64,000 nucleotides of DNA from Haliotis rufescens (GCF_023055435.1 NW_025964223.1:42098001-42162000); one strand, 5' to 3'; shown: positions 23,979 to 54,449, numbered from the stretch's first letter. Numbers and translations are program-made. Notes: a model not told the origin generated them from the sequence alone.

Positions 23979-24878
23979 ATGGATGATCTGTCGTACAAGC
24001 TCCAGGTGTTTCACACTGTTAACGAATATAAGGCCCATCGTTTAAACAGGACCGAACAGTGCAAACTTGAATCTGCTCGGACCTTGATCCATAGGGAGAA
24101 GACTCTCTATGAGAAAGACTTTCAGCTTCGAGTTCAGAAACTTAAAACTCGACAGCAAGAGATGAAAAGGGACGTGGATGTAGGCACTGATGACGAGAGG
24201 AAGGAGTTGCCCGATTCAGCGAGATCGTCATCGCTTCGATTCAGGGGCTGTAAATCTGCTCGCCTACCTAAGAGTGAGGAGTGTTCTCTATGTGACCGGA
24301 TTACTGACATAGTTCTTAAGTACGAGGCAGAGAAGCGTCCAAAGAACACAGCAACGTATTCCACGTCTACGAATCTGCGCCAATCTGACAGCCATGTCAG
24401 ACAGTTTCTGGAGTCTATAGAAACAACGGTGATGCCTTTGAAGTGGGACGTTACCTCTGGGAGTTTTATGGATGCTGGAAGAATAAATTTAGACGGACGT
24501 TGCAAAGATGGGATGCTTAGTATGAAGACTGATAAGAACCCAGATATAAACCCATCTCAGAAAAGACTGATCAGAGAATCCACCAAAATGCTTCCACCAG
24601 ACGACATGGGTCACGTGTGTACGACCTTGACCTCGGCCAAAAGTCGACGAACGTTTCCCGCCAAGATTGAAATTCAAAGGAAGGTTGGCGAGTTTGTACA
24701 GTCACAAGAGGTGTACAATAGGTCGAATCCTATCAATGAAGACATCGTTGTTCAGTGCGAGGCCTTTCGTCTCCATAGCGGCAACAGGGTGGACCGAAAA
24801 CCACCACATTTCGTCAGTAGGCGGGAAGCCATGATTTCTGAAGTCTTGGAGAAACTAGGAATGACAAGAGCCAACTAG
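23979..24878 (+). CDS. Uncharacterised single-ORF protein (299 aa), N-terminal coiled-coil; orphan family member A
   Basis: Long non-repetitive ORF in AT-rich DNA; shares VFHTVNEYKAHRLNRTEQCKL and IQRKVGEF motifs with ORFs at 46264 and 53052. Confidence 0.75.
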   Translation: MDDLSYKLQVFHTVNEYKAHRLNRTEQCKLESARTLIHREKTLYEKDFQLRVQKLKTRQQEMKRDVDVGTDDERKELPDSARSSSLRFRGCKSARLPKSEECSLCDRITDIVLKYEAEKRPKNTATYSTSTNLRQSDSHVRQFLESIETTVMPLKWDVTSGSFMDAGRINLDGRCKDGMLSMKTDKNPDINPSQKRLIRESTKMLPPDDMGHVCTTLTSAKSRRTFPAKIEIQRKVGEFVQSQEVYNRSNPINEDIVVQCEAFRLHSGNRVDRKPPHFVSRREAMISEVLEKLGMTRAN

Positions 24879-26943
24879 CCATCGCACGGTTGCTTCTTTT
24901 TCAATGTTGAACTTCGATCGTAAACGACAAGTGCAGCTTCACTTATTGTTGTAGATCCATGTCCAAGCGAAATGTGGATGGTGTCCTCTTGGATATTCCT
25001 GCAAAACGCGATATGTAAATCAGGTACATCAGTTAAGGTCTGGTATCAGACATTTAACGTTTAGTGAAAGTTGAATGCTTAACATATGCAATATGCACGC
25101 TTTTTGTACTTTAGGCCTGAAACCTATAGTGACAGTCACAAACCGCAGCTGATCAAACTGTTCAAAATGAACAGATACGAAACAATCCTACGTCGTAGCT
25201 GTGCAAAACGTCACGCAGTATTATGGAAACAAGTCCAGGTCCGTTAATTCATGCGGCTATCTGTTCGCGAGGCAGCGGAGAAAGCACAGAGAAACAGACA
25301 TCGATATTTAAGTTACATTTTACTTTTCATGAAAGTGGTATGTAATCGAATGAAATACTTATTCTATGACAAATTCTTGTGATGGAATTTTGTTGCTCTT
25401 ATAATTATTCTTAGCAATGACAAGGTGATTACATAGTGTTGTTTTTTTTCAACTGTTTAAGTCAGACTGTAATATAATCGATATCTTTTTAATCATCCTT
25501 AACATCTTCCTGCATTTCTCCCCTACCATCACAATGGTTGGATAAACGTCATTTATCTAATTTTATAACGGATCTGATAGTTTACCCCAGAATCTCTCTG
25601 AAATAAGAACCGCCTTACTCTCAGGATCTACAAGTGAGGTTGGTTGAGCAGCAGAGTAGTTTATTTGTTCGCTCGCAATGTCGAATCCCCATGATTGAAG
25701 CCATATTTTGGTGATCCCGTCGTCATAATATTTCAGGAATATTGCCAGAAGCGGCGGAAGACTATACTCTTTTACGCCTTAACAACACAATAAGTTGTGC
25801 GAGTCGTGTATAACACACAATGTAATAGTACTTCAGTAATATGACGGCGTGGCAGCTTAATGTGGGAGGACATGCCAAAATGATTTTAGCGATAACTACG
25901 AGGGATGATTAAATAGCTTTATCTGTGGTTATGGGATCATTTCACTGACTTAGTCAAGAACCTCTTCACAGCGAATTGCAGCACATTGGATCAATGAACC
26001 ACCGGTTTTCCCTTTAGTGAGTGAGTGTATTTCAGTGATATCACAGCGTGTCAGCTTGATGTGGCAGGAACGCCCGCAGTGATGCAGGTGTCGGACATTT
26101 ACCACTTTGGTGAAGCCAAAGAGCACGGTACGATGCTGACAAACCCAGACACATAATCTAGGCGAAGCCGCGATCAATATTGTCTGGCAGATCTAAAGGA
26201 CGCAACTCCGCTAAGCGAATTAAGGAGCCTCAGACGACGGGGCCACCTGCAGACGGTGATTTTGCTACATGGTAATTGTATGATTGTGCAATGTCGTTAA
26301 ATTTTGTCCCAGTTATTGTAGTGTTCAGTCAGTAGTGGTGTTACGTTTTATGAGAACCGCGACCATGTACCTCAGGGACGAGTTCATATGTCCACCCACA
26401 CGCACGCAGAGACGCAAGCAGTTATACTCGCACTCTAAAAATATAATGAAAATTATGATATCCTCAAAGAAACTTTCGGAAATAATTTTTTAAACACAAT
26501 TCATTGTTCCTCCGCACAAATATTTTCAAAACAAAGCAAACCGGTAGTTGTGAAGAGGCCACACCAACACCAACTAGCCATTCGAACCGAACCATGCCCT
26601 TTCGCCTGACGAGGTAACACATGAACCATTATCATATGAACATCATATGACACTTTTCACAATGACATGGTGAGTGAGAACCTGAGTGAATGTTGTTTTA
26701 CGACAAAGTCATTATTTAGTTATATTACGACATACTGAAAATAACTGAATCAGAAACAGGCTGACAGGTGGTTGATGGTATGAACACAACACCGTCAGAC
26801 TACAGTGACCAATAATCAGACATGTCACACATTGTGACCATTCGCTCCCCATTAGTCTAGTCTTTCAAGCTGTTGACACTGTTTCTTCCTAGGAGTTCCC
26901 TCAGGTGTCAGAATGACATGGATATACCTACTTACTTCACATT

Positions 26944-27212
26944 GGGGCACGGGTGGCACAGTCGTTTAAGGCGCCGCGATTCGCCGCGTTGCGTCCCTTG
27001 GGCACGCAAAACCTATGATTATGGGTTCGAATCCCGGTCCGACCCGATTGTGTTTCTAGGTTTGTCAGCACCATACCCGTACTCGTGGGTCCCACCGAAG
27101 TGGTAAACGTCTTAGACCTGCATCACTTCGGGCTTTCCTCCCACATTAAGCTGACGCGCCGCGATATAACTGGAATACTGTTAAAAGCGGCGTTAAACCC
27201 AACTCATTCACT
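26944..27212 (+). mobile_element. SINE family A
   Basis: Same head, body and tail. Confidence 0.88.
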
Positions 27213-28092
27213 CCTACTTCATATGATTTCCACGGTTAAGTGTGGTCTTAGATTCAGGTTCCGCTTACTTAGGGTCGTGTGCAGGTGACTATGTGTCGTT
27301 GTCCAGCATGAACCGCGACATGTTACAATTGTTTTGGTTCCGTGGAAAGCAAATTCCATACATGCCATGGTCATTGCTGTGCAAAGATATCCAAGGCAAC
27401 ATAATTCGCCTGTACATTGTTTTCCTCACGCGTGCCCTGATCTTATTATCGTTGGTTGGAATCCCAGATTCGACCTGATTTAATTAGAACAATGGTTTGT
27501 CATCACGATAAACATGCCAGTGGGTTCATCAAAGTGGTAAACGTCCATGTGGACTCTAGTTGCTGCTCGGAAAGTTTGGATCAGTTTCATGTTATAGGTG
27601 CATGTTACAGTACGTTTTCATTTATAATTCAAATCAAATCAGACAATGTTATACAAATATTCAGAATAAAATATGTTTTGAACATTTTGTAGAAGCTTTG
27701 ACCATTTCAGAACGAACAAATGCCGTCATCTATTGTGAATCATCTCAAATCCACTGTACATGGCCTGCAATAATTCACGACTAGGAACATAAGAAACCTG
27801 TCCAAATTCTGTAAAATCATGGTGTCATTGTTTAAATCTATCAAGTAACTCTCCCTCTTTCTGAATTGCACATATATTGCTACCATAGTAAATCTGTATA
27901 AATATGCATGCATGCTCGGCCAAGATGTTTTTGTATATATTCTTTATTTATATGTATATGTTTTATGTTGTTGAAATAATTTTGTACCTCTGATGCCGCT
28001 GATAGCGGCCTGAGCGTGAATAAAGTTCAATTCAGATTGTGCAAGGTTATCACTATGCTTTTTACAAGCTGTTCCCAGCGCTGTCCCAGATC

Positions 28093-28164: not shown

Positions 28165-31100
28165 ATGGAGAATATCCTGAAGTTGTTTTGGCTTATGTTT
28201 TCCTATAATCAGATATGCATGGGTAAGTTTCGATACCTTCAATTCTAAATATTGTACCTACAACTGTAATTGTACATTCAGCCATGGGTGGGAAAAATTA
28301 TCGATTGTTATTGGTCATCAGGTCCAAATCACACTAACAACCTCTGTTTGAAACAAATAATTTAAAGGCTGCATCAGCTCACAAGTTTTCTCACCAAGTG
28401 TCGGCAGACATATTGAAATAATGCTATGTACGATTATATGTGACGACACTGGCCAGAAAACACGACATAAAGCTAGGACTTTGAGTGTCCAAGGTTAAGT
28501 AACATTGGAGCGCTGGAAATTATAGTAGTTTTGCATCCGACCATGACGTCATATTTTCAGCGTCACAATGAGCGACGTGAAGTCGTAACAAAGACGTACT
28601 GTGCAGAGCTAAACTTGGAAAGGCTTGCTCACGTTGTTTACTGGTGCCCATTTATGTTGTTTACGAAGTAGTAATGTGTAATTACACTCTTTTAATGCCT
28701 GTCACGCATGGGGATAAAGTACACTGATGCAAGGTATCAATATGTGTTGGCACATACAGCGCCTTTGCGTTGAAAGACTATCATCGGCTTTTCCTTGAAT
28801 CAGATCAACAGCCCACAGCTACGTGTTCGGTGCCAAATTCAATTTTACGCAGGTAAATCTACTGGTAACCTAGCGCTACATTTAAAGGCACAGCATGTTT
28901 ATCTCCAAAATGTGTCTTCACATGTATGATACAATCGAGACAAATAAGCGACACGAATGACGTTTTAATCAACGAAAACATAATTTCACTTATGATGTAT
29001 TGCAGCTTTCACGGATACAAAAGGAAGAACATTTTCTCTGGCATTCTTTCCCGAATACATCACTCCTGCAACAAGTGATCTTCGAAACATTCTGTACTTC
29101 TCATCCACCCTTGACGGTGGTTGTACTGTGAACTACAATGACGGGACAAGACATCAGACTAATGTGCATGTTATCGCGGGCGATGTGGTAAAGCTGGCTT
29201 TACCTGACACAACACAGCTCCTAACTGGAACAAGAGTTGAACATAAGGCCATTTATGTCAACTGTTCCACCGAAATAGCTCTTTATGGCCACAATAAATA
29301 CGCTCTTGGGAGAGACACCTCAGACGCATTCACTGTTTTGACAGATGAAATGTTGTCAACGGATTATCTCGTTGCAAGTGTCGAGAAAACTGCAAACCTT
29401 GGCGTTGTGGCCACGCGAGACAATACTACTATTTCAGTGACCCTCAATGCAACATGTGATTATGTATTCAACAGTGTACGATATGGAGATGGAGATACAG
29501 TCAGTGTTACACTTGGTTATGGTGACGTATTTCAGTTAGGTTTAGCATCTACAGATGGTAAATGTGATTTAGGAGGAACCCGAATCCATTCTAATCATCA
29601 AGTCGCAGTGTTTTCTGGGGCTTTGTATGTCTGGGAACTTGACCTTGCTGCAGGTCACATGGTCAGTCAGGTTCCTCCAGAGAATGCATTTACGAAAACA
29701 GTAATTGCACCTAAAGTCGAAACTGATGAACCAGGAGGAATGACGTTGCGTGTATTGGCACGTGAGAACAATACAGTTGTGACTATAACAAGGGAAGAAG
29801 CAAATGGGACGATAGTGACTTCGTCTACATCACTGAATACAGCAGAGTTTGAAGACATCAATTCCGATTTAAGCGCTGACGTCATTGTACAGAGCAACAG
29901 GCCGATAATGTGTATCCAGAACATCTATTTCAGAAGAAGAGGAGGTTCGTCATTGTTTGTGCCAGGAACGGACCTTTATGACAACAACTACATTGTAGAG
30001 AGTTTGGATTTGGATGGCGTGAGCTCAGATGGCCCTTTTATTACTATCATGTCAGAGGTGTCATCATTTATGGATGTTCGTGTAAATGGCCAGCAACGTG
30101 ATGATATCAAATGGACTAATCTCACCACGGTACCATACGCTGTTGGCGTACTAAGGATACAACCCAAACAACCGTATGTTGTCAACAGTTCATCACCAAT
30201 CCTAGTCAGGCTTCACGAAAGATTATACCTGGAGTCATATAGCTACAATGCAGGATATCGTCTTCCATCTTTTCCAAAAAAGCGTAAGTTTAATATCCTT
30301 TTTTAGAATTGTGTTCTGTGCGAAGTTGATGACATACTATCATACTACTTTTACGATTCCCAAATTTAAACGCGGTGGTAACCCCGAAATCGGTACGTAC
30401 TGAACTAGATTGTGAAATTAGTAAATTACCCCCCAAGATCAATGAACAGTCAACACATTGTATTGACGTACACCGGATCAGGTTTACAATAATCATAAAC
30501 ATCAATACAGTGGATCAAAATATTTGGCAGTAGTGATATACAATAGCGAGATAATCCCAATTACATAAGTCAGTGCACTCACGGCATGGATAAAGAATTT
30601 ACATTACACTATGACAAATACCCGGTTGCATTTTAACAGCTTTGACAAGTAATTTTTTTTTATTTGTCTCACATGGTCTCGCACGAACTTACAACAATTC
30701 AGTGGAGGCACTGCAGTATTCTGGCAGACATGTTGAGTAAATGTTTCAGTAAACTTTGAGTAGACATAACCAAACGTGCATTAATAACGGACAGAGGTTA
30801 AGTTGGAACTTAGTAGGATTGAATGCAATATTTTGTCATTGAAACACCCTCTGATAAGCGTAGCATGTTGAGCATCAGAGTGGGAGGTACCATTAGCATT
30901 ATGAGTGAGAGACACGTACTCAGTAATATGTGATGGGGGTCAATGCATCGAAAGATTGTATATACACCTGGTTATACAATGACCTATAGCTCGTCACATT
31001 GCCTGCGTCATTCGTTTCTCGTCGTACCAGCGTACACCACCATGGCCTGTACAGCTACTGGTTCACCGGACAAGGCAAGACAAACGTGACTAAGTCATTG

Positions 31101-33954
31101 CATTTCAATCAAATAACTTAAATATTCCCTGAAGAGTCATTGATATGGTTTTCGTGTTTTTGCGTTTGTTCATTTGTAGGTTACCCTGTGAATTATATTT
31201 TTAACCTTAAAACCGGGATTTGTCTTCCATGTTATATAGCTTAATAAAACCACATGACGTCTCCAATGAAAGTTAAATGAACGTCATTGCAAATAAAAGT
31301 GACAAAACCATTTCCATAGCCACGAGAAATCTTTGTTAAAAGCAGAGTCGTTCTTAGCATACGATTAAATATGTAAACATGTCCTATCAACAGAACACTG
31401 CCGATCATTACAATGTAAGCCGCCTTTGGCATTACGCCAGTAATATGACGTCGGTTTGACGAACGAATGAACACTTAAATGAATAGGCTACCCAAACGCC
31501 TCTTCGACACACTGAGCTTGTATATATTGTCTGCTATGAAGTGTTAGAATAATAAGTGCTAATTGTGTGTACATATTTTGTAATTACTTACTTCATTGTT
31601 AATTAAGCACTAACTTGGCACCTGTATGTGTTCAATATACCCACCTCTACTTGTATTTCTACTGAATGCATACACCTTCTACTTGTTCCAGTAACAAATG
31701 CCATCGAACTCAAATGCTTAGCAAAGGGCTGGTTTGTGACGCTAAATGTAGATGTATTATACAACGTTACCCTGTCTCACATCTACATGGGGCAGAGCAA
31801 GTGTACCGGAACACTTCATGGGAATCAACTCATATTCAACCAGTCTTACACTGAATGCCATACAGAAACAAGTGTAAGTACACATGGATGTGGCAACATG
31901 TTTCTTTGAATACCGTATGGTATCAATAGATGCAGCATATGTAATTGAAGTGCAGCAACCATGCTAGGTTCTAACCCTCTACTAACAGGCAGCTGCTACA
32001 GTTATGTAATCGTTTTCTAACGCTATCAGTACCATAAGTTACAAACGAGTTCCATTTGTGCGATAAACACAAGATCATACCAATTGACGACAGGGGTGTC
32101 GCGTAAAAACCTTTGTAAATGACTTCATCAATAGTGGATCTTGCCGAAACGATTGGTAAAATATTCGTTTATAAGGGCCGGCATGGTCCGAAACAATGAC
32201 AATTTGAGGGAGTCTTGACCGCTCCCCTTGCAGCACGTGGCTCAGTTCGACTAACGTAACGGGTGGCCTTTGACGTCGCCGTAAATGTGTCCCGAGCATG
32301 TCCCAGACGTGGAACGTGCATGTCCTGAGCATGTTTCAATGGTGGAAATGTCAGGACGATACGTGCACTGTGGGCACGAACATTATCGTCTAGAAAGACA
32401 ATACGTGGACCAGCATTGTGCACAAACCACACACTACTGGGCCAGTGGGTTCTTTCAGTAGGCCGATAAATACCATTTTGTGTCTGAAAACCTGTTCTAA
32501 AGTCTGTAGGTCAAAGACGAGACACATTAAACATTTTGGCTACTTCTCGCTGAGTTCTACGAGTTTGAAACATGGCAATAGCCTAAAGCGTCTATCACAT
32601 TGAAGACAACCCATTCCCAATCTGATCTCAAATACTGCATTAAAGTATGAGTAGAGAGCTAACTTGTCTCTCTGGATAATGAAAATCAACAGAACGAATG
32701 GCCCAGAGCTAATTGACGACATTTCACTGAAATGTCAAAAGCAATTATCACCCCTACCCACGTGCACCCACATACAATGTTTTGGGTGTCATGGGGAGAT
32801 AGGTGTCCGTTCTCAAGCCGTTCAATCTCTAGCAGACATTTTTTCAAAGCTGATCGTATTTCTGTCTACCGATGAAAAGATATATATTTCATGATCCCTA
32901 CTATATTTTGAGAGTAAATGTTTATATGTCTGAAATTCAGCAACACTGGGAAGGATACATATCATATTTCAAAATCAGTCTTCATAATTTGCATGACAAC
33001 CTTTTTGTCTATCATATTAATAATTTGAACTCATTTCCAACCGTGTATGTTCATGTACCCTTTCTGTGTCTTAATGTTCTAGGTTTCCAACGGCATGGTT
33101 ATGTTCAAGAATAGAGTCATGTTTGTGGCTCTGTCCCCTGACAATGTGGTCAGACATGTCATCTGGCTGCACAGCATCAGTTGTTCGGAACCAGTGGATG
33201 GAACAAATGCTGTCCTCATTTATCCAGATTTCAATGAAACAGTAACTGGTAGTTCCACTGGACACATACAAGGTCCCAGCTTCGACATATCTCTTTTCAA
33301 AGACGCTTCATATCAGCATCTATTTTCTGGCAACCATGCCCAAGCTAAGATCGGAGAGCCAGTGTATGTTCAGGTCTCCTCATCCGTTAGTCCCAACACC
33401 ATCATGGTGTTGCGTTCCTGCGACGCCCAAATCGGCAATGGGAAAGAAGTACCTCATCCTCTGATTGAAAATGGGTAAGTATGATCTATCATTGGATTTA
33501 TCAAAAAGGACAAGATGGTTACTTTAAATAAAGTATAAATGATATAAATGATTTCATTGGATTTATCAAAAAGGACAAGATGGTTACTTTAAATAAAGTA
33601 AGCAATTTGACAATATTGATGGGGATCCTTGAAGACGATATTTTGTAACATCCGAACAAAAGAGCATGACAATTAACTCTATGTGGCACTGTTTGCTGTT
33701 GTTGTTTAACGTAACAGTCACATTAACTATGTAAATATGTAAATAATCGACTCACAACGATGTGCGGTCACACGCAAACACCTAGTAACCTTGCCATTCG
33801 ATCCAAGTAGTCGCTTCTTACGACAAGCTTAGGATTCAGGGGACCTATTCTCTAACCTGGTTAAGTGGCTGCATTTTCAAAATATAGTTGTATGTTTAGA
33901 AAACTCATTGGACTTTGTGTAACCATGCGTACAACATTGTACTTATTCAGTACA

Positions 33955-34015
<61 letters not shown>

Positions 34016-35574: not shown

Positions 35575-35775
35575 GGTGTCGCACGCAATCGGTATCCCAA
35601 CGCATACATCTTGTATGCATCTCGCTTTGTCACTCAATAAGAGTGGCTTGTGGCGGGAACCTTCTTTCATCTAGTGAAAGGTGGAAGTACTACGACTTCC
35701 TGTCTCCTGTCTCCTAGCTATAGCCATGTCTCGAGAAGCTTCTACTGTCGGAGTTCTTGTTAAGGCCGATATCAT
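35575..35775 (-). pseudogene. Fragmentary paralog of the 46264-47406 gene (5' part, internally deleted)
   Basis: GACTTCCTGTCTC...AGCCATGTCTCGAGAAGCTTCTACTG matches 47282-47326; CGCAATCGGTATC matches the 38-kb pseudogene. Confidence 0.7.
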
Positions 35776-37579
35776 TGTCATTGCTGTTCAAAGATATATA
35801 TGGTATCAACGTGCGCTGTGCAGAGTTTCCCTATGTTCTATGATCTAATTATCGTTGGTTGGAATCCCACATTCGGCCTGATTCAGAACAATGGTTTGTC
35901 AGCAAGACATACATGCCAGTGGGTTCAGCAAAGTGGTTTACTTCCTTGTGGACACCAGTTGCTGCTCGGAAAGCTTTGATCAGTTTCAAGTTGTCGGAGC
36001 ATGTTTCCTATAACACGTGTGGGAGACTAGGGACAAAGCCCTATCTTAAACGTCAAACATTTAGGCGTCGTATTACAGACATACATATACATTTAAAAAT
36101 TGACTTTCATTTTATGTGAGTCTATTGGAGTATGAACCTTCAGAGTGAGGGACAAACTGTATGGACGTCGGAGCTTGTTTGGCCCTCACTCTATAAAGGT
36201 TCATACTCCAGTGAACTCATTCCTTCGTTTTGATTACTCGGATCGGTCGTGGAGCGGATATTGTGAACGATGGTGCAGTCAAACACTCTGATTTTTCTCA
36301 ATGTACACTATCACGTTGAGTTCAAGGGTCAATTTGACCAGGAACAACGCTTAAGTTGACATTTGAGCAAGGGAATACGTCGAATTGTGTCGTTCATACA
36401 CTTATGAACGTCAGTTTTGGAGTTATTTGACCGACCTCTCATCCAATGGAAAAGCCGTATGTCATGTTAACTCCAAATTATAAAAAAAATACATAACTTA
36501 TAGTAACTTCAAATATGTCAAAAGGACAAGCACCCTTATATATTAGATTACGATAATCGACACAAAAGACGACTGGTCAAGTCAAGGTCAACCCGAAAAA
36601 GCAAAGCCCTTCAAATTTTGAGTAAGAAGTTTCTTACTTAAACGACAGCTCTTCATCACACAGAAACGCTTGCTCCTTGGAAAACCCTCTATGATAATAC
36701 GTTAAATATGTCATGTCTTTTGAAATTACTGCAGGTACATTCTGACTCGTCAGTCAGAGGTATCAAACCTCTATAACCATCACACCGCGGATGCTAATAT
36801 GTATAGAAAAGTACTCGTTTCTCATTGCCGGAAGAGGTTTTTAAATACTTACATATACAATTATACGTTACAAAATGCAGACCATGTTTTAGACTTTGAA
36901 ATATGGCGCTAGTCCCTAGCCGACTGTGACGTAATATGTTAACGTTGTCTTATCAAATGTCTGTGCTGCACTTTCAATGCCTGTTTTATCTACGGTAAAG
37001 TAAAATTATTTTGAACAAAAAATGTTATGTAACACCAAACTTTGTTTAATAGCTATTATCGGTGTTCACTTAATTCAGTTGGAGAACCCACTTAAAACAT
37101 TGATCCAACTCCCTGTCGCTTTGCACAATACCTTAGCTGAATCCAAGGAGAATGGAGATACACATACGGTGATTTTAAAGCGGGGCTGGGTTAAATTAAT
37201 GATTGAAACATTGAAAACACAATTACAGGAGCATCTGGGCTTGAGTCAGACGACCCGATAGATACCATAATTACATACCCCGAAAGCTCCCATCGCAAAG
37301 ACATAGTTATATTTTAACTACCAGACTCCCTGCCTCCGACTTCTCAAACGGTTTGCCCAATGTGGTCGCAACTGGGTGCTTGGGGACACATTCTACCCCG
37401 GGTACGCAGGGGACACGTCCTTTCATGCAAAGAATTGTTTTGCATTCTTTTTTGTTGAACACCGAAAGACAGTGTTGACATTGTATCGAACTCAACTTAA
37501 TTAATTCATGTGGCATGGTCATTGTTTTAATTCGTACATGTACAGGTCCAATTGGATATGCCGACTGTTTGGTTGTCTT

Positions 37580-38325
37580 ATTTTGCTTTCGTTCCAAGAT
37601 ATACAAAATAACTTTATAAGTCTGACTGACAATATGACTCCAACGTTCATCACTTGTCAAAATACAAATTCGTTGTCTCCTTTGATACTTACCCTTTTGA
37701 TAATAATTAAACACCTAATTATTGATCTGAAATGAAGTCGAACTTTTCTTGGATCCCTTCGATTTCAACTAAACAGTGTTAAACTTTAATAAATCTTGTA
37801 CTGTCATTTCACATTTAATTCGATAGGAATTACCTATAATAGTTATTGTATTTGATAGATTATTAATATGAGACGCCAATATAATTTCTAGCATAATCAC
37901 AGCTTTATCTCTATGACGTGTCGACAAAAGCATATAAGTTTCGAAATTGTTATTTTTCGAGGATGCACGCAATCGGTATCTCAATGCATCAAAGTTTATT
38001 ACCCAAGAGGAATGTTGTGTGTAACCGCATGTCCTATACATTCCGAGTTGTTTTTGTTTCTTATCTAACTTAATTTAGTTTTTGTAGGTAAGTTTTTTTG
38101 CATGATTATGTTTTTCTTGCGTACGTCTCGCTTTGTAGCAAACACTGCTGTTGGCGGGGGGCCCCCTGTCATCCACTGTAAGGTATAGTATGATGACTTC
38201 TTGTCTCCTCTATCCGTGCCAGTTCTCAAGAAACTTCTACTGCTTGATCTACTGGCGGAGTTCCTGGTTAAGGCCAATGTCTGTACCGACTCCGATCTCC
38301 CGCTGTGGTATACATCTTGCACCAC
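37580..38325 (-). pseudogene. Frameshifted paralog of the 46264-47406 gene
   Basis: MVQDVYHSGRSESVQTLALTRNSASRSSSRSFLRTGTDR vs MDDGYHSRRPESRQMLAMTRNSTSGFGSRSFLRHGSDR; QHSSWVINFDALRYRL vs QHSSRVIRCDALRFRL; LTSDERWSHIVSQTYKVILY vs LTSEKLRFQDSQDKVSDY; spread over three ORF pieces separated by stops or frameshifts. Confidence 0.85.
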
Positions 38326-39499: not shown

Positions 39500-39899
39500 T
39501 GACTGAGATGAAACGTATTCAAACCATGGCTCTTGTTTCAAATCGGGGATTAACCGACTGTCTAACCAGATAAACACCTGACGGCACTACTATCCAAATA
39601 AAAAAGAACATGTGATTCTGCACATAAAATTCCATTCGCAGTAATAACATTTTCACGATTGTTGATACGGATATTGGGGGAGATGTTTATATCTCCCATC
39701 GTGCCGGCAGATGAAGTTGTGTATGAAGGGATTAACTGGTCTTTTGTGACGATCTTCGGGACCATTTTGCCGCGAACCAGAATCAGAATCAGTTTATTCT
39801 CAGAAACCACAAAAGGTGGCACAAGAGCATATTACAATAAATAATTATGCATATGTACAAAAAGCAGACAAGATGGCAATTAATAACAACATGTGATTA

Positions 39900-40500
39900 C
39901 CTAGCATTTTTAATACCACTACACAATCCGACTCCTGCCAACTTCCTGAACCTCTTATAGAGTCGAACATCGTCACTCCTATGGCCAGTTGTGCGTGTGT
40001 TGCGCACGTAGCGCAGCGAGTGATTCGAGTAGAATCCTGAAAAAATGAAACATCAGTTTTCAAACAAGTTCATCTGCTCATCAGTTTCTATTCCTTTCGT
40101 CACTTTATAATGTCAATAAAACTAAATAGGCTCAGGAGGTGACTGGATATTAACTAGATAACATACCATCGGCCGATACCTTCTTTATTTACCATCAATT
40201 GGTTCATGATCGCAGCATCGCAGAGCAGTAAACATTAGAATATACTGCCCTCAAAAAGTAGGGGATAATCGAAAATAAATATGACGTACTGAACACAGGG
40301 AGGATCCGGATACACAGAGTGAACCTCTGACACACTGGCAGCTGGCCTCCGAACAAGCATTGCAGTGACGTTGCATACTCCGTTTTATCTCCGTCGTAAT
40401 CTATAAGGGGTTTGCTGCTTTTCATCTTGAAGGGCCAGGCCAAGTACCGGAAAATCTCTGGATGGTGGTCGTTGCCACTGTACAGTTTGCGAAGCACAAC
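39900..40500 (-). mobile_element. Crypton-like tyrosine recombinase relic
   Basis: Exon-like piece 40036-39900 reads GFYSNHSLR/ATCAT...TGHRSDDVRLYKR (HxxR, H and Y catalytic motifs of tyrosine recombinases, with one frameshift); the upstream part is only weakly similar. Confidence 0.6.
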
Positions 40501-40544: not shown

Positions 40545-41860
40545 CGCTCTTCAAAAAAAGAAACGCACAGGTAGATTTTTAGTCAATGTATTGTACTTAT
40601 AAAGTCGATATATTTAATTTAATATCATAGATACACATATGACATTTTGAAGCTCCATAGTCACATGTTGTCGTCGTACAAAGGCATTGAAAACTGTTCA
40701 TTGTCATGTAACTTAAGGCCACAAGGTTGCGCTGAACTCAGTATCTCGTGTGACCGCCCCGGGCAGTAATCACGGATCTGCATCTCCTCGGCACTGACTA
40801 GATAAGTGTGCGAATTCTGTCCTGCGGAATTCTGCGCCATTCTGCTTGTAACGCGTTGGTTAGTTGTGGGAGTCTCTGCGGCGTGTTCTGACGTTGACGT
40901 ACACGTCGATCGAGATCATCACAGAAGTGTTCGATTGGGTTGAGATCTGGAGATCTCGGCGGCCAGGGCAAGACGTTGATGTTGGCATTATGAGGGTAGT
41001 CCACCGTGACACGAGCTGTTTGCGGTGGAGCGTTGTCCTGTTGAAACAGCTCCCTCTGGCGGTCAATGTTTGGTAGAAGGTGAGGTTGAAGAATTTGATG
41101 ATTCATGTAGCGATTTGCTGTCAAATATCCCTTAACCACAACCAAGTCAGATCTCGTGGTGTAGATCTCGTGTGGCGATGGATCTGTTCAAAACAGGAAC
41201 GATAACTGGTCTCCTGGGTCGGATTTCAGCCTCGCAATGATGGTTATTGACAGTCTGGTCCGATATCCTCCTCAAACCAGGGATGCGTCCTGCAGTCTCC
41301 GTAGCTGTGGCATAGCGATGACTTAGGTGGAACAGTCGAATGCAGCGATCCTGAGCAGGGATGGTAACTCTTGGTCGGCCGGTTCTCGGACGGTCTGTAG
41401 TGGAGTTGAAATGTGTGTAACGGTCCCAAAGGCGACAAATGGTGCTGTGGTGGACGTTGAAGTGGCGTGCAACAGAAGACTGCAATTCCCCCTCTTTGGA
41501 TACGTCCTGTGGCGATGTTCCGAAAGGCAGCGCTGAGTCTCTCCTTTTTCGAACTTGAAAAATGTTGACAATTGAATGACAAATTATTGGCTTATGCTTG
41601 CCTTTTTATAGCCACTACCACGAGTTACGAATGCCATAACTTGCACGTGCATTTTGCTTTACTGTATTCCTCCAAGTGTGGAAACAATGCCGTTTAAGAC
41701 ATTGCAAAGCGACAATGGCTGCGTTTTGACGCACCGTTTGTCGACTACCAGGTCACCAACATTTTCCAATAACATATATCCAATTTATATACCGGACTTT
41801 TGTGTAGTCAGGTTCAAAGAACTACACGCTACCTGTGCGTTTCTTTATTTTTGAAGAGTG
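40545..41860 (-). mobile_element. Tc1 (DD34E) DNA transposon with TIRs and TA target duplication; transposase broken and internally deleted
   Basis: TIRs C(G/A)CTCTTCAAAAA(T)AAAGAAACGCACAGGTAG at both ends, flanked by TA; HTH region QSSVARHFNVHHSTICRLW..DRPRTGRPRVT; QQDNAPPQTA..WPPRSPDLNPIEH with 34 residues between D and E; the first catalytic D region is missing. Confidence 0.93.
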
Positions 41861-46263: not shown

Positions 46264-47406
46264 TTATGATGTCGAAGTGGTTGTTCTTTTGTACTCCACA
46301 TCATGACATGTCTCGGTCTTTGTGGAAAATCCACATATTGCAAGGTGACGCACATAATCAGACACTTTATCCTGGCTGTCTTGGAACCTCAGCTTTTCAG
46401 ATGTCAAAGCGTTCTTCAAATTACGAGTCGGGTTGTAAAGAGATACCAATTTACTTTCAGCAGGGATCACCTTGGAAGGATCGTCCAATGTTGTCCTCGA
46501 CCTCAGAAAGGAATATTCTGGATTACTCCATCGTACTTTCTTGCCCGAAGCTTTCTTTTTGGATAAAATGGATGAACTGACACTGTTATGCCCGTGCGAA
46601 TCTTCCCTATTATCCTGTATGGAAGCACCAAAGTCACCATTCCGTACATTGTCAGATATATCTTGTTTTGAACTGTCTTTTAGTTGGTGAAGATGTGAAC
46701 CATTGTCAGCCGCTTTAATCCGATCATCCTGTTCCTTATCAACGTTCAACTTAGTGTGATACTGTAAATCCGGAACACGGACAGGACTCGTCTCCAGCCT
46801 TTTATACCCAACTGTACTCTGTGCCTCTCCGATGTAACGTCTGAGACTGCTATTTCTGTGCAAGGAGGAATGTGTAGTTTGCCTGGTCGGGGTAAGTTGT
46901 ACCATCGAGGTTTGTCGTTCGGGTGAAGACGCTACTATGCATGATAAAGTGTCATCCCCAACAGGTGAACATTTCAGTCCAGTAATATTTCCCACATGTC
47001 CCGACTGTATTGACCGATGACGAGGCATCTGCTTGTAGTTTCCCCAAACACAGAACTTCAAGGGTGTTAAATGAGGAAATCGTGTTGAATGTAACCGGAA
47101 TCTCAGCGCATCACATCTAATCACCCGAGATGAATGCTGTTTATGTAATCGGATGTCATCCAGATCAGAATTTAACTTACTCTGTATGATTTTGTTTTTC
47201 CTGTATGCATCTCTCTCATTATCGCTCCAGAACACAGCGGGTGGTGGCAGTCTCCTCTCGTCCACTGCAAGGTGGAACTGAGACTTCCTGTCTCTATCCG
47301 AGCCATGTCTCAAGAAGCTTCTGCTGCCGAAACCACTGGTAGAGTTCCTGGTCATTGCCAACATCTGTCTCGACTCCGGCCGTCTGCTATGGTATCCATC
47401 GTCCAT
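46264..47406 (-). CDS. Uncharacterised single-ORF protein (380 aa); orphan family member B
   Basis: Intact ATG-to-stop ORF; motifs VFWSDNERDAYRKNKIIQSKL and SQDKVSDY; two decayed paralogs nearby. Confidence 0.78.
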   Translation of the reverse strand: MDDGYHSRRPESRQMLAMTRNSTSGFGSRSFLRHGSDRDRKSQFHLAVDERRLPPPAVFWSDNERDAYRKNKIIQSKLNSDLDDIRLHKQHSSRVIRCDALRFRLHSTRFPHLTPLKFCVWGNYKQMPRHRSIQSGHVGNITGLKCSPVGDDTLSCIVASSPERQTSMVQLTPTRQTTHSSLHRNSSLRRYIGEAQSTVGYKRLETSPVRVPDLQYHTKLNVDKEQDDRIKAADNGSHLHQLKDSSKQDISDNVRNGDFGASIQDNREDSHGHNSVSSSILSKKKASGKKVRWSNPEYSFLRSRTTLDDPSKVIPAESKLVSLYNPTRNLKNALTSEKLRFQDSQDKVSDYVRHLAICGFSTKTETCHDVEYKRTTTSTS

Positions 47407-50753: not shown

Positions 50754-51025
50754 AGTGAGTGAGTGAATTTGGTTTAATGCCGCTTTTAACAGTATTCCAG
50801 TTATATCGCGGCTTGTCAGCTTAATGTGGGAGGAAAGCCCGAGGTGATGCAGGTCTTAGACGTTTACCACTTCGGTGAAACCCACGAGCACGGGTATGGT
50901 ACTGACAAACCTAGAAACATAATCGGGTCGAACCGGGATTCGAACCCACAATCCTAGGTTTCTGGCGTGCCTTACTCTGCACAACGAATCGCGGCGCTTT
51001 AGACGACTGGGCCACCCGTGCCCCC
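50754..51025 (-). mobile_element. SINE family A
   Basis: Near full length. Confidence 0.88.
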
Positions 51026-51654
51026 TGAAAGCTTGGGAACTTATATCCGTCATGGTCGTCAACATTCCTACTGCACTATGGCCTATGGACAATCTAGGCT
51101 TCGTCAGGTTTCTTAGGGTTACAAGGGCAACGATTCACACTGTCGAGACACCATGATACACAATCTACCAGGTTACTCAACGTAATCACTTGTTATCTAA
51201 CGACAACCAATGGGGGTTACTGGAGGCATATTCTGCCACATTGGGGATTAATATTTGCAGATACACTGTGCATGCCGTATAATGTATTAGTAACAAGCAG
51301 AATATGTGAACTGTGATTGACTAAAGCCTTTCGTGACGTGAGACAAATATGGGTGTGCTTCAACGTATGTGCATACAGACACTTGGTCAGAGTCAAGAGT
51401 GGTTCTACTGCATATTTCTTTGCAGCTGTTGTGTCAACAAAATAAGTGTCAGGAACAAGCTCAGTGATTATATGTAGGTGTAGCAGATTGAAAAATATAT
51501 TGATTTACCACTTTGATAATATTTCGTGCAGAGACATATGCTACTGCGTTATCGTGCGCATAGGCTTTGGTAAATACCCGAGGGCACTGTATCAGTGGAA
51601 TGCGTTACAAATCTCAAACCCACTACCTACCACTACCACTACTACCTGTACAAC

Positions 51655-51827
51655 CTCAGATCTTTACCACTTCGGTTATATCGCGGCGTGTCAGCTTAAT
51701 GTGGGAGGAAAGCCCGAAGTGATGCAGGTCTCAGACATTTACCATCATAGGTTTCTGGCGTGCCCAAGGGATGCAACTCTGCACAGCTAATCGCGGCGCC
51801 TTAGACGACTGGGCCGTCCGTGCCCCC
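51655..51827 (-). mobile_element. SINE family A, rearranged and deleted
   Basis: Head and tail segments joined; the B-box segment is missing. Confidence 0.75.
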
Positions 51828-51902
51828 TATCACTGTATGAGAAAGAGCATACACGAGAAAACATCATACAACATAAAACATCAAGACTATGTCACAACAT
51901 CA

Positions 51903-52063
51903 GGGGGCGGTGGGTAGCCTAGTGGTTAAAGCGTTCGCTCGTCATGCCGAAGACCCGGGTTCAATTCACCACATGGGTACAATGTGTAAAGCCCATTTCT
52001 GGTGTCCCCCGCTGTGATATTGCTTGAATATTGCTAAAAGTGGCGTAAAACCAAACTCACTCA
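51903..52063 (+). mobile_element. SINE family C
   Basis: Full length; ACATCAG on both flanks. Confidence 0.85.
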
Positions 52064-53051
52064 CTACATCAGAGAGCACATGTCATTACACCAGAAAGCA
52101 CAATATACTTTACCAGAGTGTTACTATATTCACACAAGACAAATATGCACACTTTGGGAAACTACAGTTCAGTTCAAATAGGGTCATTCGGACGTAACAT
52201 GCACTTTACTATTCCTTTAAAACACCAACCGCACAAAATGCACCATAATGTCCTTCTAAACTTCTAAGGGCCGCTGACACAGTGATCACGGTAGCCCTTG
52301 TATCCTGACATCCCGACAATGTTAATGTACACTCATGTCAACACGTTGTATCGTGGTGTACCGTGATCCCTGATAAGCTGTTGACAGCATACAGGCGAAG
52401 GCTGAGGGTCTGCAGATGCCTCCTTCTCACCGATACAACATATCTCTCACGCCACAGAGGGGAGGAAAGACTTTTATCAAAGCATATCATAAACCATCAT
52501 AAAAGCGTCATATTATGCGATAAGCATTTAAGATTGTCCCTTAATAATCCCCATAAATCGGTAATGGCTGGTGACAGAAGCTTATTTATAGAAAAATATT
52601 TGCCGATAGTCAACATCTTGTCCTACCTTGTTATCAATGACTGCTTCAGACTGTAATAAAATCTGGCTAATTTGATAGCAATTCTCCGATTATCAAGCAC
52701 TTGACTTGACGCTGCCAGGCCCTTGGGAAAGGTAGCGACATATCATTTTGTTGGCTTCCTGCAAGCGACCTTTGACTTTGGACTTGAAATACCAACACAG
52801 GTAAGCAATACAGTAGGAAACTTAAAGCCCCTCTTAAAATATCAAGTGCTCCGATAAAGAAGGTATAAAGGGCACGGAATACACTTGTTCCTACACTAGT
52901 GGCGTGTCACTTCAGACAAAATGTTCATCTTGCTGTGATTGTTACCACGACGGTGATATAAGATGTTGGACTTCATGTGTCTGCCTTAACAAGAACTGTG
53001 TCGCGGTGAATTTCATTGAATTTGTTTTCATGGATTAAGCAACAAATAACT

Positions 53052-54449
53052 ATGTCCAAAATAACGCCAAAGGGTGTTAAAGTATTCACCGACGGGGAAG
53101 TGTTAGCAAGGGCAAAAAATCGCCACGAGGAAAGAACTCTTAATCTTCATCTGAAACATCTTCAAGAAAAACACCACGTTCTTGAGGACTCATTGAAAAA
53201 GGAAAAGCAGTATCTTCTGGAAATCAGACGAAACAGTTTTAAAACATCCGGTAGAAGTCCACTTGTTGAGGATCTTTATTGTCAGGGAAACGTATCAATG
53301 TCTAAATCCCATCAAGTCCTGTCGATGCATTTCCGAAAACCCTGGGCTTTCACGTTTGCTGAGACATCCTACAACGCCGTGTATAACGATACATTTGACC
53401 CTTATATGTATCGTCGACCAAGTGTTCGGGATTCCAGCCCTATTTTGCCAAGGGTTGGCTGTAAGTCTGCACCAGCTGGACCTAGGCAAGGAGGCAAGTG
53501 TCCCAACGTGTGCCGCCCAGTGACCTCCTTCAACCACAGAAACAATATAACCTCTCCAGAGCAGAAACACCATGCTTTTCATTTACAAACAGAGCATGTA
53601 AAGGATGGTCCTTCCCAATGTGCAGACAGAAAGGAAGATGGAACAGATGTAGTACAATACGGAACTCAACGACCACATTCAGCTGTAAGGAAAAACACAC
53701 ATGATGGCGGTTCAGTTATGAGAAAGAATAGGAAACAAAGATCACTTTCAGTGGCAAGGACAACACGAGGTGGCGGTGCAGTTCAAATGCTGCCTGAGAA
53801 ACAGAGATCACACTCAGTTGCAGGAATGGAATATCGTGCTAATCCGCTCTCCGGGTTTGATGAAGTAGACTTCAACAACCAAACTGTTTGTTCCTTGTAT
53901 TCAGCATCTGCCTTACTTGAAAAGGCAGTTCCTTTAACAGCTGTTAAGTCGACCATAGAACAGGTAAACAGTAATCAAACGAGCAATCAAAGTAAAAATG
54001 ACTTTCAGGATTCAAAGAAAGTTCCTGTCGACGTAAGTTCAAATTCCGATTCCGCAAGAGGTCTTAACGAAGGTGTGACTATGTGTGATGAGGATGTGGA
54101 TCCCTCAGTTGATACCTCTAAAGATGACAAGAGCTACATACTATTTAAAGGAAAGAGGATTCACAACTACGTCAGGCCTCAGGATCGATATCGACATGAC
54201 CCTTTTAAGGAAGTCCGACGGGAAAGTTTAGTTAGAAAGGTTTCAATAGAAAATCCTGTATTTCTAAATGGGTGCCGAGAAACAAATTTCAATTTTGGAT
54301 CGAATTTTCCAAAATCGGCACGTGACCGCGCTCTTCGACAATTGGTGGAGACAAATACTATAACAGCTGCTGAACGTAGAAGACAGGTTTTTAATAATGC
54401 TTCATTGCAGCGGCGAGTAGAAGACTTCTGTCAATCGAAGGAAGTATAG
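53052..54449 (+). CDS. Uncharacterised single-ORF protein (465 aa), N-terminal coiled-coil; orphan family member C
   Basis: Intact long ORF from ATG 53052; motifs VFTDGEVLARAKNRHEERTL and LQRRVEDF. Confidence 0.8.
   Translation: MSKITPKGVKVFTDGEVLARAKNRHEERTLNLHLKHLQEKHHVLEDSLKKEKQYLLEIRRNSFKTSGRSPLVEDLYCQGNVSMSKSHQVLSMHFRKPWAFTFAETSYNAVYNDTFDPYMYRRPSVRDSSPILPRVGCKSAPAGPRQGGKCPNVCRPVTSFNHRNNITSPEQKHHAFHLQTEHVKDGPSQCADRKEDGTDVVQYGTQRPHSAVRKNTHDGGSVMRKNRKQRSLSVARTTRGGGAVQMLPEKQRSHSVAGMEYRANPLSGFDEVDFNNQTVCSLYSASALLEKAVPLTAVKSTIEQVNSNQTSNQSKNDFQDSKKVPVDVSSNSDSARGLNEGVTMCDEDVDPSVDTSKDDKSYILFKGKRIHNYVRPQDRYRHDPFKEVRRESLVRKVSIENPVFLNGCRETNFNFGSNFPKSARDRALRQLVETNTITAAERRRQVFNNASLQRRVEDFCQSKEV

What the first reader, a model, noticed from the sequence alone, without database searches (positions are those of the whole stretch)
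23979..54449. Cluster of three divergent single-ORF orphan genes sharing a bipartite signature: a probable undescribed protein family
Seen: three long intact ORFs that look unrelated overall align at both ends. N-terminal, leading into a predicted coiled-coil: VFHTVNEYKAHRLNRTEQCKL (23979), VFWSDNERDAYRKNKIIQSKL (46264), VF-TDGEVLARAKNRHEERTL (53052), consensus VF.[ST].[NG]E..A...N.....L. C-terminal: IQRKVGEFVQS, SQDKVSDYVRH, LQRRVEDFCQS, consensus Q.[KR]V.[DE][FY]. Members A and C also share GCKSA. The middles are S/R-rich, probably disordered, and differ in length. All three lie within 31 kb in mixed orientation, with two dead copies between them. Inference: an old, fast-evolving tandem family built as conserved helix, disordered linker, conserved helix, typical of adaptors that clamp one partner. 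A germline or ciliary role is a guess from composition only.
Basis: partly seen in the sequence, partly recalled or inferred. Interest (0 to 1): 0.75.

Follow-up and report, generated by a model that had tools for sequence, protein, structure and literature searches.

The report
Abalone helical gene with divergent neighbours
Three intact single-exon genes in an abalone genome are real, but only one belongs to a mollusc-wide unnamed protein family, and each of the other two shares just one short end-piece with it, so this is an ordinary fast-evolving gene cluster of unknown function.

Summary
The window is abalone DNA: ORF B is 100% identical to a Haliotis rufescens protein over 82% of its length.

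**The ORFs are real.**
- A is 299 aa, B 380 aa and C 465 aa. The longest open frame in 50 simulated windows was 201 codons.

**Conservation and transcription.**
- A and B are intact in H. asinina (79% and 70% aligned identity).
- C is unannotated. Contigs from four runs cover only 52910-54775, unspliced, starting just downstream of a TATAAAG.

**A is not an orphan.**
- A profile of A found 19 proteins at E<=1e-3.
- Five carry species names: the H. asinina orthologue, two bivalves and two other gastropods. All are called "hypothetical" or "uncharacterized".
- The family has no Pfam model and no relative in the PDB.
- It has about six conserved blocks, not two.

**The shared bipartite signature holds only in part.** I tested it with block profiles built from the 16 non-abalone members.
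- B carries the N-block: 1-3 of 3000 shuffles reach its score. It has no C-block.
- C carries the C-block: 6-11 of 3000 shuffles. Its N-block score is at chance (429-584 of 3000), although its predicted helix 14-65 matches A's helix 14-68.
- B and C show no direct similarity.
- The two dead copies are fragments of B's N-terminus.

**Best reading.** A is a conserved parent gene. B and C are abalone-restricted, strongly diverged partial relatives. Function is unknown, and interest is modest.

The parts
23979..24878 (+). Gene A: single-exon CDS of 299 aa. It is the abalone member of a mollusc-wide unnamed helical protein family.
   Evidence: The ORF is. Orthologues are 94% (H. cracherodii) and 73% (H. 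asinina) identical by BLASTP. The profile search gave 19 hits at E<=1e-3. Against block profiles built from the 16 non-abalone members, A scores 71.0 bits (N-block) and 21.7 bits (C-block).
24006..24068 (+). A N-block (residues 10-30, VFHTVNEYKAHRLNRTEQCKL), at the start of the predicted helix 14-68.
   Evidence: Alignment A3 has A19, N23 and E26 invariant and E16 and L30 at 90% or more. AlphaFold2 pLDDT is 94-98 over residues 11-60.
24246..24260 (+). A GCKSA pentapeptide. It lies 7 residues upstream of the family's CxxC pair (C102, C105).
24663..24773 (+). A C-block (residues 229-265, the Q.R[VI]..F..Q..[FY]N[KR]..P. motif followed by E..R), in helices 227-249 and 254-268.
   Evidence: F239 invariant, R264 at 90% or more. 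One search gives pLDDT 90-95.
46264..47406 (-). Gene B: 380-aa open frame, seen only in Haliotis by the searches run. It keeps only the family N-block.
   Evidence: H. rufescens model 100% identical over 82% of the query; H. asinina 67%. One search gives 70% aligned identity with no frame break.
47167..47235 (-). B N-block (residues 58-80, VFWSDNERDAYRKNKIIQSKLNS).
   Evidence: With the 18-sequence block profile, 0 of 3000 shuffles reach its score, and the same holds for the H. asinina orthologue. With the 16 non-abalone sequences the counts are 3 and 1 of 3000, and 1 and 0 of 3000 for the orthologue. hhalign gives P=0.032.
39848..40039 (-). Distant exon used by the public H. rufescens model of B. 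That model splices out of the ORF at about 46471 and so replaces the C-terminus that is conserved in H. asinina.
   Evidence: tblastn of the model's tail: 98.4% identity over 64 aa, E=3e-40.
38089..38322 (-). Dead partial copy of B's N-terminus. It has no ATG and ends in a stop after about 80 residues.
   Evidence: 46% identity, E=1.5e-9. (E=1.5e-12).
35645..35869 (-). Second dead partial copy of B's N-terminus, with in-frame stops.
   Evidence: 61.8% identity over 34 aa, E=4e-5.
53052..54449 (+). Gene C: single-exon CDS of 465 aa. It was not found as a protein in the public sets. It is probably a diverged, C-terminally truncated relative of A.
   Evidence: The ORF is. None of 6841 candidates scored as a homologue. 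It is single-copy in the genome. Contigs of 4 runs cover it without a frameshift and with one in-frame +6 insertion.
53082..53141 (+). C N-terminal motif (residues 11-30, VFTDGEVLARAKNRHEERTL), at the start of the predicted helix 14-65.
   Evidence: Its position and helix match A. Its profile score is at chance: 426 of 3000 and 429-584 of 3000.
53457..53471 (+). C GCKSA pentapeptide, followed 9 residues later by CPNVC.
   Evidence: the sequence is.
54357..54446 (+). C C-block (residues 436-465, ending LQRRVEDFCQSKEV and then the stop codon).
   Evidence: BLASTP against A gives E=5e-4 and hhalign gives 6e-4. Shuffles reaching its score: 1 of 3000 and 6-11 of 3000 with the non-abalone profile. 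No family-like sequence follows the stop in any frame.
52864..52870 (+). TATAAAG, 40-52 bp upstream of the leftmost contig ends. It is a candidate core promoter of C.
   Evidence: motif scan; contigs begin at 52910, 52922, 52986 and 53015.
52910..54775 (+). Stretch covered by contigs of four public runs. It is the probable unspliced transcript of C, cut at the (CA)n repeat.
   Evidence: tables 2 and 8. Depth is zero at 52202-52869 in all four runs.

Best explanation
**Gene A (shown).** Gene A is the abalone orthologue of a conserved, so far unnamed, mollusc-wide protein family. Members are basic proteins of about 300-500 aa. Their build is:
- an N-terminal helix of about 55 residues that opens with the motif [VF].[ST]..E[YF]KA..LNR.EQ.KL;
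- disordered Ser/Arg-rich linkers of variable length;
- a short CxxC helix and an FSDxQ helix;
- a C-terminal group of three helices carrying Q.R[IV]..FC..Q..FNK..P.P and a final EV..LG.

**Genes B and C (inferred).**
- They are single-exon genes seen only in abalone, within 30 kb of A.
- Most likely they descend from old, partial or heavily diverged tandem duplicates of A.
- C keeps A's layout: the motif at residues 11-30, a helix at 14-65, GCKSA plus a Cys pair, and the C-block. It ends right after the C-block and so lacks the last ~55 residues of the family.
- B keeps only the N-block behind a 57-residue extension. B later spawned two dead N-terminal fragments.

**How it works (inferred, low certainty).**
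- The long N-helix is a coiled-coil pairing element.
- The C-terminal helices bind a partner.
- The linkers are flexible and may be phospho-regulated.
- B and C would each present only one of A's two interaction surfaces.
For: **A as a family member.**
- The HMMER profile of A found 19 proteins at E<=1e-3, of which 3 at <=1e-10.
- The hits that carry species names are from Haliotis asinina (the orthologue), Pinctada imbricata, Mya arenaria, Batillaria attramentaria and Plakobranchus ocellatus.
- The six blocks are visible in the 18-row alignment.
- Profiles built without any abalone sequence score A at 71.0 and 21.7 bits.

**Structure.**
- A has helix 14-68 at pLDDT 94-98 and C-terminal helices at 90-95. 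Residues 72-99 and 153-191 are below 50.
- C, folded from a single sequence, has helix 14-65 at pLDDT 80-95, residues 69-419 mostly below 50, and helices 421-461.

**B N-block.**
- 0 of 3000 shuffles reach its score, and 0 of 3000 for its H. asinina orthologue.
- With the non-abalone profile the counts are 3 and 1 of 3000 (global and window shuffles), and 1 and 0 of 3000 for the orthologue.
- The full family HMM gives E=3.7e-4 at Z=1.

**C C-block.**
- 1 of 3000 shuffles and 6-11 of 3000.
- BLASTP 5e-4, hhalign 6e-4, 0 of 500 shuffles.
- C has FC where abalone A has FV, as most non-abalone members do. So the match is not a recent copy of A.

**The genes are real.**
- Open frames far exceed chance.
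- A and B are intact in H. asinina.
- C is covered by unspliced contigs in 4 runs from 4 coded organisms. The only indel inside the ORF is in frame.
- 11 of the 29 listed variant sites in C are synonymous, against 22% expected. That gives dN/dS of about 0.47, binomial P=0.04.
Against: - The B and C block scores are only 5-10 bits and would never surface in a database search.
- The genome-wide search with the family profile found only A, among 7 scored candidates.
- The whole-family HMM gives C E=0.34, and 2309 of 3000 shuffles do as well as C. For B the count is 22 of 3000, and for its orthologue 110 of 3000.
- C's N-block score is at chance.
- B's C-terminal motif gets no score.
- Blocks 2, 3 and 6 are not detectable in B or C.
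- Collinear chains are not significant: 63, 144 and 36 of 500.
- The runs laid on C are only guessed to be RNA, and they were chosen because they hold C.
- No read evidence was obtained for A or B.
- No data bear on function.
Confidence: 0.6

Rival explanations
1. B and C are unrelated abalone-restricted genes, either born de novo or diverged from unknown parents, that merely lie near A. On this reading the N-block and C-block resemblances are chance or convergence between helix-forming, basic sequences.
For: - Block scores are only 5-10 bits.
- hhalign probabilities are 0.1-28%.
- The genome-wide profile search finds only A.
- Chain tests are not significant.
- Each gene shows only one block at a significant level.
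Against: - Profiles built only from non-abalone species still single out B's N-block (0-3 of 3000 shuffles, in two orthologues) and C's C-block (6-11 of 3000). This includes shuffles that keep local composition.
- The blocks sit where the family has them.
- C's motif offset and helix 14-65 mirror A's 14-68.
- GCKSA plus a Cys pair is collinear in A and C.
- All three genes lie within 31 kb.
Confidence: 0.27
2. One reading: A, B and C are three equal members of one orphan family defined by a bipartite N-plus-C signature.
For: - The motifs exist as quoted.
Against: - A is not an orphan.
- B's C-motif gets no score and C's N-motif scores at chance.
- B against C shows no similarity.
- The family has further conserved blocks that B and C lack.
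Confidence: 0.08
3. One or more of the ORFs are not genes. They could be untranscribed relics or exons of larger genes.
For: - C is absent from the public protein sets searched.
- The public H. rufescens model of B splices out of the ORF to an exon 6.4 kb away.
- The RNA status of the runs is a guess.
Against: - Open frames of 311-479 codons compare with a maximum of 201 in simulations.
- A and B are intact at 70-79% aligned identity in H. asinina, with the helices conserved and the linkers not.
- C's contigs start just downstream of a TATA box, are unspliced, and leave the unique flanks uncovered in all 4 runs.
Confidence: 0.05

Closest known systems
Unnamed mollusc protein family represented by Pinctada imbricata KAK3098535.1, Mya arenaria XP_052812029.1, Batillaria attramentaria KAK7503169.1 and Plakobranchus ocellatus GFN89899.1 (all labelled hypothetical or uncharacterized)
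   Same: A shares all conserved blocks with these proteins: the N-block with its long helix, the CxxC helix, the helix-3 block, the C-block and the terminal EV..LG. B shares the N-block only and C the C-block only.
   Different: B and C lack four or five of the six blocks and have much longer unrelated middles. The family has no Pfam model, no solved relative and no paper that cites these accessions.
TEX33 / CIMIP4 (Pfam PF15400), a ciliary microtubule inner protein
   Same: It is the nearest ESM Atlas cluster to C by language-model features, at score 0.82. Both are small basic proteins.
   Different: A third of shuffled proteins reach a score of 0.8. Pfam hmmscan of C at E<=1 does not list PF15400. 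This is a lead only.
Sds3 / SUDS3-like coiled-coil proteins (Pfam PF08598)
   Same: These are the nearest ESM Atlas clusters to A, at 0.84-0.85. Both have a long helix.
   Different: None of the 18 family members scanned matches PF08598 at E<=1. The Atlas score is below the 0.9 level that the tool treats as more than a lead.
CCDC190-like coiled-coil proteins
   Same: Only a general resemblance: a short basic protein with an N-terminal helix.
   Different: No Pfam family of any kind reaches threshold for A, B, C or the 18 family members. I could not make a direct comparison.

Membership tests
Unnamed mollusc helical family (alignment A3) | N-block [VF].[ST]..E[YF]KA..LNR.EQ.KL at the start of a long helix | tested here: met
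   Against the profile of 16 non-abalone members, A scores 71.0 bits. B scores 7.8 bits, reached by 3 and 1 of 3000 shuffles; its H. asinina orthologue scores 9.6 bits, reached by 1 and 0 of 3000. The feature is met for A, weakly met for B, and not met by score for C (0.3 bits; 429-584 of 3000), although C's helix 14-65 sits in the same place.
Unnamed mollusc helical family (alignment A3) | C-block Q.R[IV]..F[CL]..Q..FN[KR]..P.P | tested here: met
   A scores 21.7 bits. C scores 5.1 bits, reached by 6 and 11 of 3000 shuffles, and 8.5 bits, reached by 1 of 3000, with the 18-row profile. B and its orthologue get no score at all, so the feature is not met for B.
Unnamed mollusc helical family (alignment A3) | CxxC helix (C..C..IQ.II..YE) and FSDxQ..F...LE helix | tested here: not met
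   Both are present in A. In B and C the block 2 and block 3 profiles score at chance: 216-1000 of 1000 shuffles do as well. C has only GCKSA followed by CPNVC.
Unnamed mollusc helical family (alignment A3) | Terminal block ..EV...LG. at the C-terminus | tested here: not met
   It is present in A. In B, 113 of 1000 shuffles do as well. C and the B orthologue get no score. C's frame stops right after the C-block and nothing family-like follows in any frame.
Unnamed mollusc helical family (alignment A3) | Detected by the whole-family profile | tested here: inconclusive
   At Z=1, A has E=3.5e-83, B 3.7e-4, the B orthologue 0.0042 and C 0.34. The six-frame search of the abalone's own genome returns only A.
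TEX33/CIMIP4 (PF15400) | Match to the Pfam model | tested here: not met
   PF15400 is not listed for C at E<=1. The only support is an ESM Atlas score of 0.82.
Sds3-like (PF08598) | Match to the Pfam model | tested here: not met
   0 of 18 family members match at E<=1.
CCDC190-like | Sequence similarity to CCDC190 | not testable with these tools
Pfam scans gave no coiled-coil family above threshold.

The most novel reading that the evidence does not exclude
A is a two-surface helical adaptor: an N-terminal pairing helix plus a C-terminal partner-binding bundle. B and C are naturally occurring 'half copies' that each keep one surface. Abalone would have retained them as competitors or modulators of A's complexes. 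This would be a worked example of orphan genes born from a conserved neighbour by duplication and near-total divergence, leaving only one interaction module recognisable.
Probability: 0.12. Interest if true: 0.55.

Novelty: new member of a known kind. Interest (0 to 1): 0.3.

Why it matters
The result defines a mollusc-wide protein family that has no Pfam model, no solved relative and no literature that I could find. It also gives the family's block structure, which could seed a family model.

It offers a small, concrete case for the debate on where taxon-restricted genes come from. Two abalone-only genes lie beside a conserved gene and retain only one short block each.

It does not reveal a new mechanism or system, and nothing here points to a function. 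The value is for annotation and for studies of gene birth and rapid divergence in molluscs.

Tried and rejected
**Searches and tests that led nowhere**
- Pfam on A, B and C: only chance hits far below cut-off, at E 0.12-0.66.
- Pfam on all 18 family members: no family matched by more than one member.
- The family profile against PDB sequences: best E=0.33.
- Foldseek of the A model against the PDB: 0 matches at E<=0.001 and 26 at E<=10, all long-helix noise. With pTM 0.27 the model cannot show whether the N and C helices pack together, and the tool gives no PAE.
- ESM Atlas: TEX33 at 0.82 for C and Sds3 at 0.85 for A. Both are below the level the tool treats as evidence.
- Word-indexed homologue search for C: none of 6841 candidates scored.
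- Collinear-chain test of ungapped HSPs: not significant for any pair. The threshold was low, so the test is noisy.
- I tested whether B's N-terminal extension carries the 'SSVWGS' motif of the long-N (mostly bivalve) members. It adds nothing for B itself (172 of 1000 shuffles). The H. asinina orthologue scores better (10 of 1000), but its best stretch is the N-block region at residues 61-81.
- A residues 257-267 resemble B residues 95-107 (VVQCEAFRLHS against VIRCDALRFRLHS). I did not count this, for three reasons. It is not collinear. The family C-block profile gives B no score. It is weaker between the H. asinina orthologues.
- Literature, search listings only: 0 papers hold any of six accession or locus names. 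A search on abalone sperm proteome terms listed 3 irrelevant papers. I opened no paper and saw no supplements.
- Earlier scan notes: two notes on this window concern the CBM20 gene at 3.5-5.8 kb and do not bear on this finding. Word searches gave nothing on this cluster.

**Rows left out**
- Alignment A3 uses the window's A plus 17 of the 20 retrieved family proteins (P0001, P0002 and P0005-P0022).
- P0001 (H. cracherodii) was dropped as near-identical to A.
- P0012 (129 aa) and P0015 (89 aa) were dropped as fragments.

**Not done**
- No read evidence for A or B.
- No dN/dS for A or B, because only orthologue proteins were available, not DNA.
- No synteny with WARS2 in other molluscs, because no eukaryote genome collection was available.
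- The variant table is truncated ('108 more are not shown'), so the 11:18 count is a sample.

Full report
**What the window is.** It holds 64 kb of animal DNA with no N, on a contig of a 1.33-Gb genome in 615 contigs. ORF B is 100% identical over 82% of its length to a Haliotis rufescens protein. The nearest relatives of A and B are from H. cracherodii and H. asinina. So this is an abalone, at or very near H. rufescens. Earlier scan notes on other pieces of the same genome also call it red abalone.

**Checking the observation.**
A runs 23946-24878 (+) with its first ATG at 23979, giving 299 aa. B runs 46264-47406 (-), 380 aa. C runs 53016-54449 (+) with its first ATG at 53052, giving 465 aa.
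- Their open frames of 311, 382 and 479 codons compare with a mean longest frame of 159 and a maximum of 201 in 50 first-order Markov simulations of the window.
- Each is single-copy in the genome.
- The quoted peptides and the shared GCKSA are present.
- The 'two dead copies' exist, at 38089-38322 (-) and 35645-35869 (-). Both copy only B's N-terminal ~80-110 residues. The first lacks a start codon and ends early; the second has in-frame stops.
- All three proteins are basic (pI 9.3-9.8), with 9-13% Ser and 9-10% Arg.

**Are they genes?**
- A has full-length intact orthologues in H. cracherodii (96% aligned identity) and H. asinina (79%). B has one in H. asinina (70%).
- Conservation is uneven in the way expected for coding sequence under selection.
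  - A's N helix is 91% identical to H. asinina, helix 3 is 100% and the C part 84%. Its linkers are 34-59%.
  - B's residues 53-128 are 87% identical against 56% in the middle.
- The public H. rufescens model of B leaves the ORF at about 46471 and splices to an exon at 39848-40039 (-). That replaces a C-terminus which is conserved in H. asinina, so the unspliced frame is probably the real product.
- C matched no public protein: none of 6841 candidates scored. For that reason I spent the single reads call on it.
  - Twenty of the 24 listed runs hold part of C, 8 of them at least half of its words. None is on record as RNA; 14 of the holders are guessed to be RNA.
  - Contigs of four runs from four coded organisms lie only on 52910-54775. 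Depth is zero at 52202-52869 and at 51200-51533, and contigs break at the (CA)n repeat.
  - No splice joint falls in the gene. One contig of 1645 nt spans 52922-54566.
  - The only indel inside the ORF is an in-frame 6-base insertion in one run.
  - A TATAAAG sits at 52864, 40-52 bp before the two leftmost contig ends.
- Caveats on the C evidence:
  - The runs were chosen because they hold C, and their RNA nature is a guess.
  - Contig totals of 59-101 Mb, with longest contigs of 11-18 kb for a 1.33-Gb genome, fit transcriptomes better than genomic libraries. That is my inference.
- Of the 29 variant places listed inside C, 11 are synonymous and 18 are not. About 22% synonymous is expected, so dN/dS is about 0.47 with binomial P=0.04. 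The table was truncated, so this is a sample.

**A is not an orphan.**
- A HMMER profile of the three abalone A sequences, run against 1.84 billion representatives, found 19 proteins at E<=1e-3. Three are at <=1e-10, and one of those (<=1e-30) is the H. asinina orthologue.
- The hits that carry names come from H. asinina (the orthologue itself), two bivalves (Pinctada imbricata, Mya arenaria) and two other gastropods (Batillaria attramentaria, with two records, and Plakobranchus ocellatus). All are 'hypothetical' or 'uncharacterized'. The rest are unnamed contigs.
- An 18-row alignment (three rows left out, see Tried and rejected) shows six conserved blocks:
  1. the N-block, opening a long helix;
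  2. C..C..IQ.II..YE;
  3. (HS.C.)FSD.Q.R.F...LE;
  4. Q.R[IV]..FC..Q..FNK..P.P;
  5. E..R;
  6. ..EV...LG.
- AlphaFold2 on this alignment gives A a helix at 14-68 (pLDDT 94-98) and helices at 103-119, 137-151, 227-249, 254-268 and 281-292. Disordered stretches lie at 72-99 and 153-191. Mean pLDDT is 66 and pTM 0.27.
- No Pfam family matches more than one of the 18 members.
- The family profile finds no PDB sequence below E=0.33.
- Foldseek finds nothing at E<=0.001.
- No paper holds any of six accession names (listing only).

**Do B and C belong to it?**
- Pairwise evidence is thin.
  - BLASTP shows only the A-C C-terminal match (13 of 30 identical, E=5e-4). The A-B and B-C N-terminal alignments have E=17 and 8.9.
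  - hhalign gives 0.021 for A-B (N-term), 6e-4 for A-C (C-term) and 0.45 for B-C. With the 18-row family it gives 0.032 for B and 0.03 for C, both at the N-term.
  - The whole-family HMM at Z=1 gives B 3.7e-4, its orthologue 0.0042 and C 0.34. Shuffles reach those scores in 22, 110 and 2309 of 3000 trials.
  - A six-frame search of the whole abalone genome with the family profile returns only A.
- I then cut the N-block and the C-block out of the alignment and scored B, its orthologue and C against shuffles.
  - With all 18 rows: B N-block 0 of 3000 and its orthologue 0 of 3000. The B C-block gets no score. C N-block 426 of 3000. C C-block 1 of 3000.
  - With only the 16 non-abalone rows, so independent of A, using global and 25-residue window shuffles: B N-block 3 and 1 of 3000, and its orthologue 1 and 0 of 3000. 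The B C-block gets no score. C N-block 429 and 584 of 3000. C C-block 6 and 11 of 3000. A serves as the positive control at 71.0 and 21.7 bits.
  - Blocks 2, 3 and 6 are at chance or absent in both B and C.
- The bipartite signature is therefore not shared by all three. B has the N end and C has the C end.
- C has extra, softer support:
  - Its motif starts at residue 11 (A: residue 10).
  - Its single-sequence AlphaFold2 helix runs 14-65 (A: 14-68), followed by about 350 low-confidence residues and helices at 421-461.
  - GCKSA is followed by a Cys pair in both A and C.
  - C keeps the FC of the family consensus where abalone A has FV.
  - C stops directly after the C-block, and nothing family-like follows in any frame.

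**Most likely explanation.**
- A is the conserved parent.
- C is probably an old tandem duplicate that kept the layout but diverged almost beyond recognition and lost the last ~55 residues. My estimate is about 0.8.
- B probably shares only the N-terminal helix start with the family, behind a 57-residue extension. My estimate is about 0.65. B has itself been partly copied twice nearby.
- B predates the split from H. asinina. C was seen in four coded organisms.
- How the proteins work is inference only. I read them as a pairing helix, flexible basic linkers and a small C-terminal helical module, that is, a scaffold or adaptor. Nothing here tests a germline or ciliary role.

**Comparison with what is known.**
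- The only family that A demonstrably belongs to is the unnamed mollusc one.
- TEX33/CIMIP4 and Sds3 are language-model leads below the tool's own threshold, and Pfam does not support them.
- CCDC190 could not be compared directly.
- The general phenomenon is well known: a conserved gene flanked by fast-evolving, taxon-restricted, intronless relatives and dead fragments.

**Verdict.**
- This is a real but ordinary cluster. The family definition for A is new as a description.
- The relation of B and C to it is plausible but rests on matches of 5-10 bits.
- Interest is 0.3.

Noticed in passing
window 19500-20027 (+): This ORF matches the C-terminal part of Pfam tRNA-synt_1b, the class I Trp/Tyr tRNA synthetases (E=1.4e-12).
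   Followed up: partly
window 21092-22471 (-): A 459-aa open frame is made of about 39 tandem 33-bp units that encode an 11-residue acidic repeat (consensus near DDKEGPDKQLV). It lies between the synthetase exon and gene A and has no Pfam match.
   Followed up: partly
window 17845-19468: A 100-bp tandem repeat of 16.4 copies at 94% match lies directly upstream of the synthetase exon.
   Followed up: no
window 29128-30306 (+) and 33095-33478 (+): A 392-aa ORF carries an IgGFc_binding domain (E=2.4e-31) and a 127-aa ORF carries a ZP-C domain (E=3e-6). They are probably exons of one secreted or ZP-type gene lying between A and the dead B copies.
   Followed up: no
window 40798-41485 (-): Broken remnants of a DDE_3 transposase (E=1.3e-7) sit next to the distant exon (39848-40039) that the public H. 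rufescens model of B uses.
   Followed up: no
window 51534-52201: A repeat with tRNA-like ends is covered at enormous depth, with many rearranged joints, in all four runs. It looks like an abundant SINE-type element just upstream of gene C.
   Followed up: no
alignment A3, columns about 313-425 (family members P0011, P0013, P0014, P0017, P0019, P0020, P0022): In the long-N (mostly bivalve) members the CxxC pair is followed about 24-27 residues later by H..C. This gives a possible C2HC zinc-binding arrangement. It is not conserved in the gastropod members or in abalone A.
   Followed up: no
window 24747-24779 (A residues 257-267) and 47086-47124 (-) (B residues 95-107): There is a non-collinear resemblance, VVQCEAFRLHS against VIRCDALRFRLHS. 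It is weaker between the H. asinina orthologues and the family profile does not support it, so it is probably chance.
   Followed up: partly
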